Origin: Guillardia theta CCMP2712
Taxonomy: Eukaryota; Protista; Cryptophyta
Assembly: GCF_000315625.1 (NCBI RefSeq)
Contig: NW_005434599.1
Location: forward strand, 314,070 to 348,272
Direction: 5' to 3'
Length of the DNA: 34,203 nucleotides
Below, piece after piece: positions 28,730-34,203 of this stretch (its first letter is position 1; every line of letters starts with the position of its first letter). Both the position numbers and the translations under genes were made by a program. Under the pieces are notes generated by a model. That model worked only from the letters and a program-made list of their open reading frames with translations. It had not been told where the DNA came from and did no database searches.

Positions 28730-29080
28730 GATCGGACTGACTCCCCGGCCCGGGTCCGGGGAGTCCCGGACACCCGGGCCTGAGCCTGAGCCCTCCGAGT
28801 CACCGGGCGATCGGCTGACTGAGGCTCCCCGCCGGGACTCCGGGACCCGGGCCTGAGCGGCCTGAGCCCTCCTGAGTGGCGATCGGCCGCAGTGACTCGG
28901 AGGCTCCCCGGGTCCCGGGCGCGGCCCGGCCTGAGCCTGCCCTGACTCCGCAGGCGGCGGCCCTCAGTGATGATCGGCTTGAGGCTCCCCGGGCCCCCGG
29001 GCCTGGTGACGTAGTGTCCAGGAGTCCTGGGACTTGGCTCTTCCGGGCCCCGCCGGGCCTTCAAGTCGGCCTCCACTAGT
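28730..29080. repeat. GC-rich CCGGG/GACTC/CCTGAG island, copy 3
   Basis: Same word composition as 2585-2790 and 25510-25945. Confidence 0.6.
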
Positions 29081-29979: not shown

Positions 29980-32900
29980 ATGCTTCAAGAAGACCCCGGC
30001 ATTATGCTGTCGAATCGCTCGGCAAACATGGATCGGGTCGAGGCTACCGGGCCCGCAAAAGGTTTCCGGGCTCGTCGCGTTGCGTTCCGATCGAGAATGA
30101 AGAATCGAGTAGCAAGGCAAGAACGAGGAGGAAGAGAAAGTGGTGATGGTGGTGTCTGAAGAGAAGGAGAGGAGGGGGGGGGGGTGGGGGGGGAGGAGGA
30201 GGAGAAGGCGCAGAGTCTTTGCTGAGNNNNNNNNNNNNNNNNNNNNNNNNNNNNNNNNNNNNNNNNNNNNNNNNNNNNNNNNNNNNNNNNNNNNNNNNNN
30301 NNNNNNNNNNNNNNNNNNNNNNNNNNNNNNNNNNNNNNNNNNNNNNNNNNNNNNNNNNNNNNNNNNNNNNNNNNNNNNNNNNNNNNNNNNNNNNNNNNNN
30401 NNNNNNNNNNNNNNNNNNNNNNNNNNNNNNNNNNNNNNNNNNNNNNNNNNNNNNNNNNNNNNNNNNNNNNNNNNNNNNNNNNNNNNNNNNNNNNNNNNNN
30501 NNNNNNNNNNNNNNNNNNNNNNNNNNNNNNNNNNNNNNNNNNNNNNNNNNNNNNNNNNNNNNNNNNNNNNNNNNNNNNNNNNNNNNNNNNNNNNNNNNNN
30601 NNNNNNNNNNNNNNNNNNNNNNNNNNNNNNNNNNNNNNNNNNNNNNNNNNNNNNNNNNNNNNNNNNNNNNNNNNNNNNNNNNNNNNNNNNNNNNNNNNNN
30701 NNNNNNNNNNNNNNNNNNNNNNNNNNNNNNNNNNNNNNNNNNNNNNNNNNNNNNNNNNNNNNNNNNAGAGGATCTAGCTTGGATTCCTGGTCGGCAAACA
30801 GTAAGGTAGGAAACGAGCAAAAATCTGAAGTTCACCACGTTCATATCCGGAAAGTTGCGGGCTCTATGCCCGATCAACGTAACAGGGTGCGCCCACCAAA
30901 CCAGGCTTAGCGTTCCGGGATAGATACAAAAAAAATCCTCAGAACCACACTCCAATGATGTAAAACAGAATGTGGTGATTCATTTCTCCAATTCCATTCA
31001 GAGACATTCTGTGGTGGGGGGGAGGAGGAGGAGGAGGAGGCACGAGTCTTTGCTGAGTCTGTGGCAGGTGGTTCAAGCAGACTCGTGATATCAGCTTCTT
31101 CAATATGGATGAGCTCCAGCGAGGAATCTCCCCGAACATGGTGGCGTCCATGATGAGCCACGACAGGTGCGCTGGTTTGGATGAGTGTACAGACGATGAT
31201 GATGATGACGATGACGATCGATGACGATGATGATGACGATGACGACGGTATAGGTTGCTCGGGTCCCTTCCGCCATCAGAAGAATTCCTCAAAGAAGGTC
31301 TGCAAGCGTTGGACTAGATCGTGATACTGGATATAATACTGATGGAGGAGGAGGAGGAGCAAGAGAGGAGGAGCATGATGATGATGATGATGACGACGAT
31401 GGTGATGATGATGATGATAATTATGATGGTCCAGGCATTGTAGAGAAAAGAAGCCAGGAGAAGAAGTGGCAAGAGAGGAGGATTATCCTGACATCAACAC
31501 ACATCATCTTGACAACGCAAGGGTCGGACATGATCAAAGACAGCATCTTTCTGCGAGATGTCTCCCTTGCTCGGTCTCTTCTCTCCTCTCAGTGAGTTGT
31601 CGATGACTTCACTACAGGTCAGTGAGCCACCTCGACGGTCATCGGTTTGACCTGCTGGACCGAATGAAAGAGCATGAGGAGGAGAGGGAAATCGAGTGCG
31701 GGCAATCGCAGAACGGAGGATCGTTCAGAGGCAAAGTCAAACAGGTCGCGCACGTCGACAGCTTCACGTTCGAAGTTCACACGAGGGAAGAGAGTGAGAG
31801 CTGCGGGAGGGTCTACGTCTTCCGCAGCTTTGACGAGAAGGAGACAGACGACTGGGTCAAGATGATCGACGAGCAGGCGAAGCTCTCTATGGATAGCGCT
31901 CTACACGACAGGCTCGGAGAGTTCGAGAGGATGCGCTACAAGATCGCCATGTTCTACGACAGCAACCCAGTGCAGAGCGTCGTCGCCTTCCTCATCACCA
32001 TCAACTTCTTGGCTAACGCGGCGCAGTCGGAGCTCCTTCCTAAGGAAGGCAGCAGCATGGCGAACTTCTTCGCTGTGCTCGACGATCTCTTCACGATCCT
32101 CTTCACGATCGAGCTGGGGCTCAACCTCATCTCTCACTGGTTCTGGCCCTTCATCTCCGACGGCTGGTCCGTCTTCGACTTCGTCATCGTCTCCATCTCC
32201 CTCATCGCCATGATTGTCGGCAACCTCCCGGGCGTCAAGTCGCTTCGCCTCATGCGAGCCTTCCGCGTCCTCCGCCTCTTCGGCCGCCTGCAGTCGCTGC
32301 GGCAGATTATCACCGCACTGACTCACTCCATCGTCCCCGTCCTGAACGCGTTCCTCATCATGCTCCTCGTCACTTGCATCTACGCCATCCTCGCCGTCAA
32401 CTTCTACAGCGACCGGAGCCCCGAGTTCTTCGGCTCTTTTCTCGCGCCTGCTTCACCCTCTTCCAGGTCTCCCTCCCTCCCTCCCTCCCTCCCTCCAGTC
32501 CTCCCTACCTCCCTCCCTACTCCATTCCTCCCTCCCTCCCCTCATCTCTCCTCCAGGTCTGCACGGGCGACGGCTGGGCGAGTGAGATCGCTCGTCCAAT
32601 CTTCCATGACGGCAGTGGAGGAGACGGGAAAGATCACCTGGGGCTGGACGGGAATGTCGCGTTGTTCTTCGTCTCCTTCATCGTTATCGTCGGTTGGACC
32701 CTCCTCCAGGTCTCCTCTAGTCTCCTCTCGTCTCGTTTCGTCTCTTCTCCTCTCCTCCCCTCCCCTCCCTCCCTCTCTCTTTCTTTGTCTCAATTTTACT
32801 AGTTCTGTTTCTCTGTCCCCTCCTTCCTCTCTTCCCTCTTTCATGTCTTCTGCAGGTCGTCGTTGCCGTTCTCCTTGACAACTTCACCGCCGCAGCAGAG

Positions 32901-34203
32901 TGAGCAGAGGAGGAGGAGGAGAGGGAAGGAAAGGAAGGAGGAGAGGGAAGGAAAGGAAGGAGGAGAGGGAAGGAAAGGAAGGAGGAGAGGGAAGGAAAGG
33001 AAGGAGGGGTGTGGAAGGGGCGGGTGTTTAATCTCATCCTGCTGGCAGGGCGGAAAAGGAGGACAAGATCAGGCAGAAGAATTTGCAGGAGGGACGTGCG
33101 CTAGTCGTGTTTGCCATCGACCCCCTCCTGGTCCTGCTATACTACCCCTTACTCTTCGTCTTCTTCTCCCTCTCCTCCTCCACTTCCTCTGACGTCTCAG
33201 CAGGCGGCGCTCGCTCACTTCGACACCTCGCAGGATCTTTCTGATCGCATCTCCATGCTCTTCAACATCCTCGACACCGACGACTCCAACACCCTCAGCT
33301 TCGAGGAGCTCTCCTACGGTCTCCGCAAGCTCAAGGTCCCTCTCCTCTCCTCTCCCCCNNNNNNNNNNNNNNNNNNNNNNNNNNNNNNNNNNNNNNNNNN
33401 NNNNNNNNNNNNNNNNNNNNNNNNNNNNNNNNNNNNNNNNNNNNNNNNNNNNNNNNNNCCTCTCCTCTCCTCTCCTCTCCTCCTCCTCTCCTCTCCCCCC
33501 TCCTCTCCTCTCCTCTCCTCTCCTCTCAGCAGCCGCAGGTTCGGCCTCCCATCTCGCTCTCTCGCGATGATTTCGAGGTCATGACCATCCAAGGAAGTCT
33601 CCTCAACGACCGCGGCGAGCTCGGCCCCTCCGAGTTTGACAAGGTCAGGTCCCAGCTGGAGATAAGCTGAAGGGGACACTGCAAGAGGACGAGGAAGAGG
33701 AAGAGGAAGAGGAAGAGGAAGAGGACGAGGGATGACGATGATGATGATGATGACGACGACGATGATGACGATGATGCTGTAGGTGATGAGGAGGCAGTTG
33801 AAGCTCTACGTGCAGCGGCAGATGGCGAACGCGATGGACCTGCTGGGAGCTAATTCGACAGGACAGCAAGACACTCTCTTCTTCGTGCTGAAGCTGCTCA
33901 TGATCGGTGAACTCGAGGAGGATGCGAAAGCAGGAGGAGGAGGAGGAGGAGCAGGAGGAAAAGAGGATGTGGGGGAGGAGGAGGAGGAGGAGGAGGTTCC
34001 CTGACTCAGGGAGCAGGAGTGAGCGAGATCCACGAGTCTGTGAACCCGCAGGACGCCTGGTGTGAGGACGCGAGGGAGCGAGTGAAGCCTCCGGTAGAGG
34101 CGAAAGTTGAGGCGTTGGAAGTGAAGGTGAGAAAGAGGAGCGATCAAAGAGGAGGGCTGGAGAGGGACAAAAGGAGGGGACAGGGGAGAGGAAAGGAAAG
34201 AGG
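29980..34203 (+). CDS. Single-domain 6TM voltage-gated cation channel (BacNav/CatSper/EukCat-like) with N-terminal PH domain and C-terminal EF-hand; apparent 1-bp frameshift; 3' end unresolved
   Basis: PH: KEGIVEKRSQEKKWQERRIILT...FEVHT..GRVYVFRS..KETDDWVKMI. S2 FTIEL. S3 WSVFDFVIV. S4 KSLRLMRAFRVLRLFGRL. Pore FTLFQVCTGDGWASEIARP. S6 LLQVVVAVLLDNF. EF-hand DTDDSNTLSFEE. Exon 1 (29980-30116) is tentative. Confidence 0.88.
30227..30766. other. Assembly gap
   Basis: Run of N. Confidence 0.99.
31192..31430 (+). repeat. Intronic (GAT/GAC)n and (GGA)n microsatellites in two introns flanking a short exon
   Basis: Visible directly; similar tracts occur at 33685-33780. Confidence 0.85.
33359..33458. 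other. Assembly gap inside an intronic (CTCTC)n tract
   Basis: Run of N. Confidence 0.99.

What the first reader, a model, noticed from the sequence alone, without database searches (positions are those of the whole stretch)
31255..33910. Single-domain voltage-gated channel with PH domain, EF-hand and CatSper-like TGDGW filter
Seen: PH domain, 6TM with a basic residue at every third position in S4, filter T-G-D-G-W (32563-32577), S6 with Gln where this family usually has Asn (LLQVVVAVLLDNF), and one canonical plus one degenerate EF-hand. Knowledge: BacNav filters are TLESW-like, CatSper subunits use TxDxW, and single-domain EukCat channels occur in marine algae. A PH domain is not part of the BacNav or CatSper alpha-subunit architecture. 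Inference: a possibly Ca2+-permeable homotetramer integrating voltage, phosphoinositide or G-protein input and Ca2+ feedback. Its small size could make it useful as a tool.
Basis: partly seen in the sequence, partly recalled or inferred. Interest (0 to 1): 0.72.

Follow-up and report, generated by a model that had tools for sequence, protein, structure and literature searches.

The report
PH-domain voltage-gated channel gene, cryptophyte
This is a real 10-exon gene of the alga Guillardia theta for a one-repeat voltage-gated cation channel with a PH domain in front, a calcium-type pore filter and an EF-hand tail; it is one of about 45-60 such loci in this genome, and as assembled this copy is one base out of frame just before its pore.

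Summary
The gene is GUITHDRAFT_114473 of Guillardia theta CCMP2712. It has 10 GT-AG exons between 31105 and 34004. It encodes:
- an N-terminal PH domain (Pfam 26.2 bits; the predicted structure matches BTK, SKAP55 and Slm1 PH domains);
- S1-S6 with a K/R4 S4;
- the filter TGDGWAS at 32563-32583;
- S6 with Gln where relatives have Asn;
- an EF-hand pair, with EF1 canonical and EF2 degenerate.

The assembly gap lies inside intron 8, and no coding sequence is lost there.

The exons sum to 1832 nt, one base short of an open frame. The break is in a T4 run at 32437-32440. The Hanusia phi ortholog transcript reads straight through this point. The public protein model dodges the break and therefore lacks the pore helix and filter. 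I could not check reads, so assembly error versus a recent pseudogene remains open.

The channel belongs to the EukCatB/NavEh lineage, in a cryptophyte subclade, not to CatSper or BacNav. The PH fusion is family-wide: about 45-60 loci in this genome, plus Hanusia and Hemiselmis and a PH-like N-terminus in Cryptomonas. I found it in no paper. This scan has already reported the same family on other DNA of this genome.

Ca2+ permeability and lipid input are inferred, not shown.

The parts
31105..31166 (+). Exon 1: start codon and N-terminus (MDELQRGISPNMVASMMSHD..). It has no Arg cluster of the NavEh N-helix type.
   Evidence: It matches public model P0001. An in-frame stop lies upstream at 30956.
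31254..31297 (+). Exon 2: the lead-in to the PH domain and the start of strand 1 (..LPPSEEFLKEG).
   Evidence: P0001.
31435..31573 (+). Exon 3: PH strands 1-5 (IVEKRSQEKKWQERRIILTS...IKDSIFLRDVSLAR).
   Evidence: Pfam PH_15/PH weak hits on the exon alone; tblastn to Hemiselmis P0010; AF2 model.
31618..32466 (+). Exon 4: the PH loop insertion, PH strands 6-7 and C-helix, the pre-S1 helix, S1-S5 and the start of the pore helix. It contains the frame break.
   Evidence: Ion_trans 93.8 bits, E 1.2e-26; 80% identical to Hanusia phi P0002; tblastn.
31254..31876 (+). PH domain (residues about 34-168 of P0001), split by introns 2 and 3, with a disordered insertion of about 32 residues.
   Evidence: Pfam PH 26.2 bits. 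AF2 core pLDDT above 90 with seven strands plus a C-helix. The top Foldseek hits shown are all PH domains or PH-containing modules, 143 with E <= 0.001.
32237..32302 (+). S4 voltage sensor: KSLRLMRAFRVLRLFGRLQSLR.
   Evidence: Direct reading; motif scan.
32437..32440 (+). T4 run where the frame shifts by one base (EFFGSF | SRACFTLFQ).
   Evidence: Frames. Exon sum is 1832 nt (corrected for E1/E2). The ortholog transcript P0002 reads EYFGSFSRACFTLFQVCTGDGW without a break.
32557..32709 (+). Exon 5: end of the pore helix, selectivity filter, extracellular loop and the first part of S6.
   Evidence: 47 of 50 residues identical to P0002; tblastn.
32563..32583 (+). Selectivity filter T-G-D-G-W-A-S: Asp at the high-field-strength site and Gly at +1.
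   Evidence: Direct reading; alignment A3.
32856..32899 (+). Exon 6: the rest of S6 (VVVAVLLDNFTAAA..). Together with the end of exon 5 it gives LLQVVVAVLLDNF.
33049..33130 (+). Exon 7: post-S6 helix and linker (AEKEDKIRQKNLQEGRALVVFAIDPLL).
   Evidence: AF2 helix continuing from S6.
33204..33335 (+). Exon 8: EF-hand 1. The canonical loop DTDDSNTLSFEE is at 33273-33308.
   Evidence: EF-hand_6 27.0 bits on the exon; profile hits to CDPK and centrin; AF2.
33359..33458 (.). Assembly gap, inside intron 8 (33336-33538), flanked by CT microsatellite.
   Evidence: The 132-residue spacing is invariant across homologs.
33539..33643 (+). Exon 9: EF-hand 2, degenerate. The loop LLNDRGELGPSE is at 33599-33634.
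   Evidence: The beta-bridges at model residues 76 and 117 pair the two loops.
33783..34004 (+). Exon 10: conserved helix VMRRQLKLYVQRQMANAM..FFVLKLLMIG, then an acidic/Gly tail and a stop. The public model instead splices after LLMIG.

Best explanation
The locus is gene GUITHDRAFT_114473 of the cryptophyte Guillardia theta. It encodes one subunit, about 610 residues if the single missing base is an assembly error, of a single-repeat voltage-gated cation channel of the EukCatB/NavEh lineage.

Shown here:
- the exon structure;
- a PH fold joined by its long C-terminal helix to the pre-S1 helix;
- an intact-looking voltage sensor, with K plus four R in S4, Glu in S2 and Asp in S3;
- the filter TGDGWAS;
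- an S6 Gln specific to the clade;
- a C-terminal EF-hand pair with one ligand-complete loop.

Inferred, not shown:
- Four subunits form a homotetramer, or a heterotetramer with paralogs, that opens on depolarisation.
- Asp at the high-field site with Gly at +1 makes the pore Ca2+-permeable and probably Ca2+-selective.
- EF1 gives Ca2+ feedback on gating, as suggested for EhEUKCATB1.
- The PH domain holds the N-terminus at the inner leaflet or to a partner, and so tunes gating or localisation.
For: Identity. The locus is 100% identical to P0001, GUITHDRAFT_114473. The window is G000:C75:314070-348272.

Channel. Ion_trans scores 93.8 bits. Per matched stretch, the best solved match of one channel repeat is NavEh (8j7f, 7x5v), one stretch of 92.4 bits. 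The best single repeat of Nav1.2 scores 59.4 bits and NavMs/NavAb score about 60 bits.

Tree. The window pairs with Hanusia phi (100/99) inside a 19-row TGDxW clade (100/99). The TGESWSE clade carries the EhEUKCATB1 filter. It groups with the TGDxW clade and a small TGDSWAE/TGDSWNE group in one unstarred 52-row grouping (92/76). All of these are separated from BacNav at 100/100.

PH domain. Paralogs also carry a PH domain directly before the channel: L015 scores 25.7 bits, L017 28.0 and L021 27.6. About 62 loci match the PH/pre-S1 profile, and about 45 of them reach the first half of the PH domain.

EF-hand pair.

Selectivity.
- The E305D mutant of EhEUKCATB1 (TGESWSE to TGDSWSE) conducts Ca2+ and Ba2+ (bioRxiv 10.1101/2020.04.29.068528).
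- Gly at filter position 4 determines Ca2+ selectivity in CavMr and is present in CatSper3/4 (PMC7041947).
- One-repeat channels with Gly at HFS+1 are classed as Ca2+-selective (PMC10120453).

Gene integrity. All exons after the frame break are open. They keep all 37 invariant columns of the tail alignment.
Against: - As assembled, the reading frame is broken at 32437-32440.
- I found no expression data for this G. theta gene. The only transcript evidence is from the Hanusia ortholog, and that transcript retains introns.
- The PH score is only just above the Pfam cut-off.
- Position W+1 of the phosphoinositide motif is Gln, not Lys or Arg, so lipid binding is uncertain.
- The filter differs from every tested channel. 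It has Gly at position 2 and Ala-Ser at positions 6-7, so selectivity is an extrapolation.
- EukCatA, EukCatC and CatSper sequences were not in my tree.
Confidence: 0.8

Rival explanations
1. This copy is a young pseudogene. The one-base loss in the T run is real, so the protein ends out of frame before the pore helix and no channel is made from this locus.
For: The assembled sequence is out of frame. The family is large, at about 45-60 loci. Several loci show stops inside matches, so some copies are expected to decay.
Against: It is the only lesion in 1832 nt. All later exons are open and keep every invariant residue of the tail. Exon 5 is 47/50 identical to the Hanusia ortholog. A T5-to-T4 homopolymer miscount is a typical error of draft assemblies, and this window alone has four gaps.
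Confidence: 0.3
2. The channel is Na+-selective or non-selective like other EukCats. The Asp/Gly filter does not confer Ca2+ selectivity in this scaffold.
For: Its nearest characterised relatives, EhEUKCATB1, SaEUKCATB1 and NavEh, are Na+ channels. Diatom EukCatA with Asp at the high-field site is non-selective.
Against: E305D alone made EhEUKCATB1 conduct Ca2+ and Ba2+. Gly at +1 gives Ca2+ selectivity in CavMr and is found in CatSper2/3/4.
Confidence: 0.25
3. The PH domain is not a lipid sensor. It is a protein-binding or purely structural module, for example for clustering, trafficking or tethering the N-terminus.
For: In the family only the strand-1 Lys and the strand-2 Arg (W+3) are conserved. 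The W+1 position is Gln, Asn, Thr or His. Most PH domains bind phosphoinositides weakly or not at all (general knowledge). Some relatives carry the PH domain after the EF-hand tail instead (P0057, P0059).
Against: The domain sits directly before the membrane-embedded S1. It has a basic strand1-strand2 loop, KRSQEKKWQERR.
Confidence: 0.4
4. It is a CatSper homolog, a subunit of a sperm/flagellar-type Ca2+ channel complex.
For: It has a T-x-D-G-W filter like CatSper3/4.
Against: No CatSper chain is among the 60 best solved matches. NavEh, Nav/Cav repeats and BacNav all score higher. S4 is strongly charged. The closest relatives are algal EukCatB-type proteins.
Confidence: 0.03

Closest known systems
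EukCatB channels: EhEUKCATB1 = NavEh of Emiliania huxleyi (PDB 7X5V, 8J7F), and SaEUKCATB1
   Same: A single 6TM voltage-gated repeat from a red-plastid alga. The filter begins T-G-(E/D)-x-W. There is a C-terminal EF-hand-like pair. It is the best single-repeat solved match (92.4 bits). It belongs to the same starred 65-row eukaryotic set, separated from BacNav at 100/100, and within it to one unstarred 52-row grouping (92/76). The papers list cryptophytes as EukCatB holders.
   Different: NavEh has no PH domain. Its filter is TGESWSE, with Glu and Ser, and it is Na+-selective. It keeps the S6 Asn. It has an N-terminal helix with an Arg cluster that plugs the pore. This copy has Asp/Gly, Gln in S6, a PH domain and no Arg cluster at its N-terminus.
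Bacterial single-repeat channels (NaChBac, NavAb, NavMs; CavMr)
   Same: The same 6TM fold and a homotetramer design. FxxxTxExW-type pore helix and filter. CavMr (TLEGWVD) shares the Gly at filter position 4.
   Different: About 270 residues with no PH or EF-hand domains. They score about 60 bits against 92 for NavEh. They are separated from the algal clades at 100/100.
CatSper1-4
   Same: A T-x-D-x-W filter. CatSper3/4 have D-G-W. They are Ca2+-selective one-repeat subunits.
   Different: They form an obligate heterotetramer with many auxiliary subunits, and have weakly charged S4 segments (general knowledge). They are not among the best solved matches. They have no PH or EF-hand domains.
Other PH-bearing members of the same cryptophyte family (G. 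theta GUITHDRAFT_134639, 104223, 148822; Hanusia phi; Hemiselmis andersenii A0A6U5CI52)
   Same: The same PH + 6TM + EF-hand layout, TGDxW filter and LLQVVVAV in S6.
   Different: This copy has a longer PH loop insertion, a short N-terminus, and the one-base frame break. Its public model lacks the filter.

Membership tests
EukCatB / NavEh-type single-repeat voltage-gated channels | One 6TM repeat with a charged S4 and no further repeats in the gene | tested here: met
   Ion_trans 93.8 bits. S4 has K plus 4 R. Stop at 34002-34004. No channel match from window position 28931 to 4.7 kb beyond the window end apart from this gene. The nearest other hit on the contig is about 71 kb away.
EukCatB / NavEh-type single-repeat voltage-gated channels | Groups with haptophyte, cryptophyte and pelagophyte sequences, apart from BacNav, EukCatA, EukCatC and CatSper | tested here: inconclusive
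   In one unstarred 52-row grouping (92/76) with the TGESWSE clade (the EhEUKCATB1 filter), and separated from BacNav at 100/100. NavEh is the best single-repeat solved match. No named EukCatA, EukCatC or CatSper sequences were available for the tree.
EukCatB / NavEh-type single-repeat voltage-gated channels | C-terminal EF-hand(-like) pair, as in EhEUKCATB1/NavEh | tested here: met
EukCatB / NavEh-type single-repeat voltage-gated channels | N-terminal inactivation helix: two hydrophobic turns followed by an Arg cluster (a NavEh feature, not proven for the whole family) | tested here: not met
   The N-terminus is MDELQRGISPNMVASMMSHDR, with no basic cluster. Relatives such as P0010 (MAAILLAAKRRR) do have one.
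PH domain (PF00169) | Seven-strand sandwich capped by a C-terminal helix | tested here: met
   AF2 gives strands 13-20, 26-33, 37-41, 48-53, 57-63, 110-116 and 126-131, and a helix at 134-159, with core pLDDT above 90. Foldseek TM-score on the target is up to 0.77 to SKAP55 and TAPP1 PH domains. Pfam gives 26.2 bits.
PH domain (PF00169) | Phosphoinositide motif K-Xn-(K/R)-X-R on strands 1-2 | tested here: inconclusive
   The sequence EKRSQEKKWQERR has the strand-1 Lys and the final Arg, but Gln at the (K/R) position. Binding cannot be tested with these tools.
EF-hand | 12-residue loop with oxygen ligands at positions 1, 3, 5, 9 and 12, and a hydrophobic residue at 8 | tested here: met
   EF1 is D-T-D-D-S-N-T-L-S-F-E-E and scores 27.0 bits. 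EF2 (LLNDRGELGPSE) fails at positions 1 and 5.
CatSper | Closest sequence kinship to CatSper1-4 | tested here: not met
   No CatSper chain is among the 60 best solved matches. NavEh, Nav/Cav repeats and BacNav rank higher.
BacNav | Bacterial clade, TLESW-type filter, S6 Asn, no extra cytosolic domains | tested here: not met
   The filter is TGDGW, S6 has Gln, and PH and EF-hand domains are present.

The most novel reading that the evidence does not exclude
The cryptophyte clade would be a natural Ca2+-selective, homotetrameric, strongly voltage-gated channel whose gating or placement is set by a built-in PH domain that reads inner-leaflet phosphoinositides. That would be a direct fusion of a lipid sensor to a Cav-like channel, with EF-hand Ca2+ feedback, multiplied to dozens of paralogs that could mix into heterotetramers.
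Probability: 0.2. Interest if true: 0.7.

Novelty: new variant of a known kind. Interest (0 to 1): 0.5.

Why it matters
EukCatB/NavEh channels are the only eukaryotic one-repeat Nav-type channels that have both electrophysiology and a cryo-EM structure. The cryptophyte branch adds two things I did not find in any paper.

- It has a PH domain fused directly before the voltage sensor.
- It has a natural Asp/Gly filter of the kind that gives Ca2+ selectivity in CavMr and CatSper.

If the inference holds, these are compact homotetrameric Cav-like channels with lipid and Ca2+ inputs. That would be useful for work on selectivity and gating, and for understanding excitability in cryptophytes.

For this locus there is also a practical point. 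The public protein model lacks the selectivity filter because it steps around a one-base frame break. Surveys based on that model will misread the gene.

Tried and rejected
I therefore had no read-level check of the T run, the splice sites or the gap. I did not try other routes to reads.
- Supplements. The supplementary tables of both EukCat papers are not held. I could not check whether protein 114473 was in their EukCatB set.
- G. theta genome paper. It is not held, so the sequencing chemistry is unverified.
- Joined protein. Exons were searched by reference. Full-length questions were answered with the public model P0001 and with intact homologs.
- P0001. It is unusable for the pore, because it replaces 28 residues (SRACFTLFQVCTGDGWASEIARPIFHDG) with LAPASPSS.
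- Foldseek on the tail. It gave only weak E-values (0.03 and above), although every top hit was an EF-hand protein. The profile search carries that claim.
- An intron at the break. I rejected an intron as the cause of the frame change, because the two reading frames abut with no room for one.
- Alternative junctions for intron 3. I rejected a 26-nt intron and a phase-0 donor at 31560. Only 31573|31618 keeps the frame, and it matches P0001.
- Family assignments. I rejected CatSper and BacNav membership, and a four-repeat channel.
- Tools not used. I did not use the large HMMER search, the third word search or the complex predictor. None would have changed the verdict.
Full report
**Source and locus**

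The window is G000:C75:314070-348272 of an 87-Mb, 669-contig assembly. The exon-4 translation is 100% identical to 'hypothetical protein GUITHDRAFT_114473 [Guillardia theta CCMP2712]' (P0001, 562 aa). The organism is therefore the cryptophyte Guillardia theta.

**Gene structure**

I read the three forward frames, ran tblastn of four homologs against the locus, and checked the junctions (with E1 and E2 corrected by one base). This gives ten exons:

| Exon | Coordinates |
|---|---|
| E1 | 31105-31166 |
| E2 | 31254-31297 |
| E3 | 31435-31573 |
| E4 | 31618-32466 |
| E5 | 32557-32709 |
| E6 | 32856-32899 |
| E7 | 33049-33130 |
| E8 | 33204-33335 |
| E9 | 33539-33643 |
| E10 | 33783-34004 |

All nine introns are GT-AG and 44-203 nt long. 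Exons were searched by reference. For full-length questions I used the public model P0001 and intact homologs.

**The assembly gap**

The gap (33359-33458) lies inside intron 8 (33336-33538), between CT-microsatellite flanks. Exon 8 ends on a whole codon (…KLK) and exon 9 begins on a whole codon (VRPP…). In 14 family members the distance from the S6 motif LLQVVVAV to the YVQRQ motif is exactly 132 residues. P0001, which joins exon 8 to exon 9 across the gap, has the same 132. No coding sequence is missing, and the frame does not depend on the true length of the gap.

**The frame break**

The exons sum to 1832 nt, one short of a multiple of three. The shift is at the T4 run at 32437-32440. One frame reads …SPEFFGSF and the next frame continues SRACFTLFQ.

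The Hanusia phi ortholog transcript (P0002, 80% identical over exon 4) reads EYFGSFSRACFTLFQVCTGDGWATEIARPIF… without a break. There is no room for an intron at this point.

The public model P0001 steps around the break. It reads on as LAPASPSS and splices into the middle of exon 5. It therefore lacks 28 residues, including the pore helix end and the whole filter.

Everything after the break is open. It keeps all 37 invariant columns of the tail alignment, and exon 5 is 47/50 identical to Hanusia. This suggests a homopolymer miscount in a draft assembly; this window alone has four gaps. My odds are about 70:30 for an assembly error.

- *Channel.* Ion_trans scores 93.8 bits, E 1.2e-26, on exon 4 alone.
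- *S4.* It reads KSLRLMRAFRVLRLFGRLQSLR (32237-32302). The S2 Glu (TIELG) and the S3 Asp (VFDFV) of the charge-transfer centre are present.
- *Filter.* T-G-D-G-W is at 32563-32577, followed by A-S.
- *S6.* It reads LLQVVVAVLLDNF. In alignment A3 the Gln aligns with the Asn of the TGESWSE clade (VLINVVVAV) and of bacterial channels (VVNLLVG). The Gln is shared by nearly all of the TGDxW clade; one relative has Pro.
- *EF-hand 1.* The loop DTDDSNTLSFEE (33273-33308) has all ligand positions. The exon scores 27.0 bits against EF-hand_6, cut-off 25.
- *EF-hand pair.* A profile of the tail matches whole EF-hand pairs of centrin, calmodulin and CDPK (best E 2.6e-6). The AF2 model has pLDDT 86-93 over residues 41-140. 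It shows helix-loop-helix twice, with the short beta-bridge between the loops at residues 76 and 117. All top Foldseek hits are EF-hand proteins, though with weak E-values.
- *EF-hand 2.* The loop LLNDRGELGPSE keeps Gly6, Leu8 and Glu12 but lacks acidic ligands at positions 1 and 5.

**The PH domain**

- Pfam PH scores 26.2 bits (cut-off 25.1) over residues 34-168 of P0001.
- I aligned 17 N-terminal regions from homologs and paralogs (A1) and predicted the structure. Mean pLDDT is 78.8. 96 residues have pLDDT of 90 or more. The model has seven strands and a 26-residue C-terminal helix that runs almost directly into the pre-S1 helix. There is a disordered insertion of about 32 residues between strands 5 and 6.
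- Foldseek against the PDB gave 143 matches at E ≤ 0.001. The top ones shown are all PH domains or PH-containing modules (BTK, SKAP55, Slm1, TAPP1, AKT3), with target TM-scores up to 0.77.
- The lipid motif is only partly present. EKRSQEKKWQERR keeps the strand-1 Lys and the strand-2 Arg, but has Gln at the (K/R) position. The family shows the same pattern.

**No further repeats**

A stop follows at 34002-34004. tblastn with four channel proteins found nothing else from window position 28931 to 4.7 kb beyond the window end. The nearest other channel hit on the contig is about 71 kb away.

**Family**

*Relatives.* The closest relatives are:
- Hanusia phi;
- G. theta paralogs;
- Hemiselmis andersenii, which UniRef names 'PH domain-containing protein';
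- Cryptomonas curvata;
- many unnamed metagenome proteins.

Nearly all carry FQVCTGD(G/S/N)W.

*Next group out.* It carries FFQVLTGESWSEA. This contains TGESWSE, the filter published for EhEUKCATB1.

*Solved structures.* The best match of a single channel repeat is NavEh from Emiliania huxleyi (8j7f, 7x5v; one stretch of 92.4 bits). The best single Nav1.2 repeat scores 59.4 bits, and NavMs/NavAb score about 60 bits. No CatSper chain is in the top 60. By total score the four-repeat Nav chains rank first, because they match in three or four stretches.

*Tree.* I built a maximum-likelihood tree of the S1-S5 region with 68 rows.
- The window exon pairs with Hanusia (100/99) inside a 19-row TGDxW clade (100/99).
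- That clade joins a small TGDSWAE/TGDSWNE group first.
- These two then join the 30-row TGESWSE clade in one unstarred grouping (92/76).
- All of these are separated from bacterial channels at 100/100.

*Literature.* The EukCat papers state that EukCatB occurs in haptophytes, cryptophytes and pelagophytes, and that the G. theta genome was searched.

*Conclusion.* I file the gene as a cryptophyte EukCatB-type channel.

**How common the design is**

- Long single-exon reading frames at paralog loci carry a PH domain directly before Ion_trans. L015 scores 25.7 bits, L017 28.0, L021 27.6 and L016 19.9.
- A profile of the PH/pre-S1 module matches 71 exon pieces in the genome.
- By my count these pieces fall into about 62 loci, and about 45 of them reach into the first half of the PH domain.
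- Earlier notes of this scan, on other DNA of this genome, describe the same family and estimate 40-50 genes. I treated those notes as leads, and my own counts agree.
- The TGESWSE clade and NavEh have no PH domain (precomputed Pfam columns).
- The PH domain therefore looks like a gain at the base of the cryptophyte clade.

**How it probably works**

*Shown:* the domains and motifs above.

*Inferred:*
1. A tetramer opens on depolarisation.
2. The pore passes Ca2+. Changing Glu to Asp in EhEUKCATB1 (TGESWSE to TGDSWSE) made that Na+ channel conduct Ca2+ and Ba2+. Gly at filter position 4 is a determinant of Ca2+ selectivity in CavMr and is present in CatSper3/4, TVDGWTD and TQDGWVD. A review classes one-repeat channels with Gly at the high-field +1 site as Ca2+-selective, whether the high-field residue is Glu or Asp.
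3. EF1 gives Ca2+ feedback. EhEUKCATB1 currents needed external Ca2+, and the authors pointed to its EF-hand pair.
4. The PH domain is tied to S1 by one long helix. It anchors or senses something at the inner leaflet. Whether that is a lipid or a protein is open.

This copy's N-terminus lacks the Arg cluster of the NavEh inactivation helix. Relatives such as Hemiselmis (MAAILLAAKRRR…) do have one.

**Novelty**

The 6TM + EF-hand core is known and structurally solved. I found the PH fusion and the natural Asp/Gly filter of the cryptophyte clade in no paper. Databases do label some members as PH-domain proteins. I rate the finding a new variant of a known kind, of moderate interest. This particular copy adds an annotation correction and an unresolved frame break.

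Noticed in passing
L012 (G000:C1:75877-79566), minus-strand ORF 1-2937: An intronless paralog of 979+ aa has a strong EF-hand pair (PF13499, 39.9 bits, residues 160-221). It sits between an N-terminal PH half (residues 95-141) and the channel (residues 323-551). This looks like a Ca2+ sensor placed inside or just after the PH domain.
   Followed up: partly
P0057, P0059, P0066, P0067 (metagenome relatives): These relatives carry a PH domain (28-29 bits in P0057 and P0059; for P0066 and P0067 only the precomputed PF00169 label) after the EF-hand tail, near residue 410-530, instead of or in addition to one in front. P0011 and P0004 appear to have two PH-like regions upstream of the channel.
   Followed up: partly
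P0013 (MMETSP transcript): This member of the same clade has the filter TMEGW. That is the motif of domain I of animal Cav channels, from memory. It also has Pro in place of the S6 Gln/Asn (LLPVVMAV).
   Followed up: no
window 30227-30766: A 540-N assembly gap lies about 340 nt upstream of the start codon. A further 5' exon or the promoter could be hidden there. The present N-terminus is shorter than in paralogs. It lacks their MAAA...KRRR-type start, which resembles the NavEh inactivation helix.
   Followed up: partly
P0002 (Hanusia phi transcript): The ortholog transcript retains at least three introns (after LLQ, after AAAE and after DPLL). Its predicted protein starts at the exon-4 boundary. 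It is therefore an unspliced or partly spliced RNA.
   Followed up: partly
window 33650-33780, 33910-34000 and introns 1-2: GAG/GAT/GGA microsatellites fill several introns and the acidic/Gly tail of exon 10. Similar repeats occur at dozens of places in the genome. The public model splices the tail repeat out.
   Followed up: no
G000: C265:19681-20184, C265:33681-34184 and C420:5845-6348: Near-identical PH/pre-S1 matches occur at two places 14 kb apart on one contig and on a third small contig, with the same E-values. This suggests recent tandem duplication or uncollapsed assembly copies.
   Followed up: no
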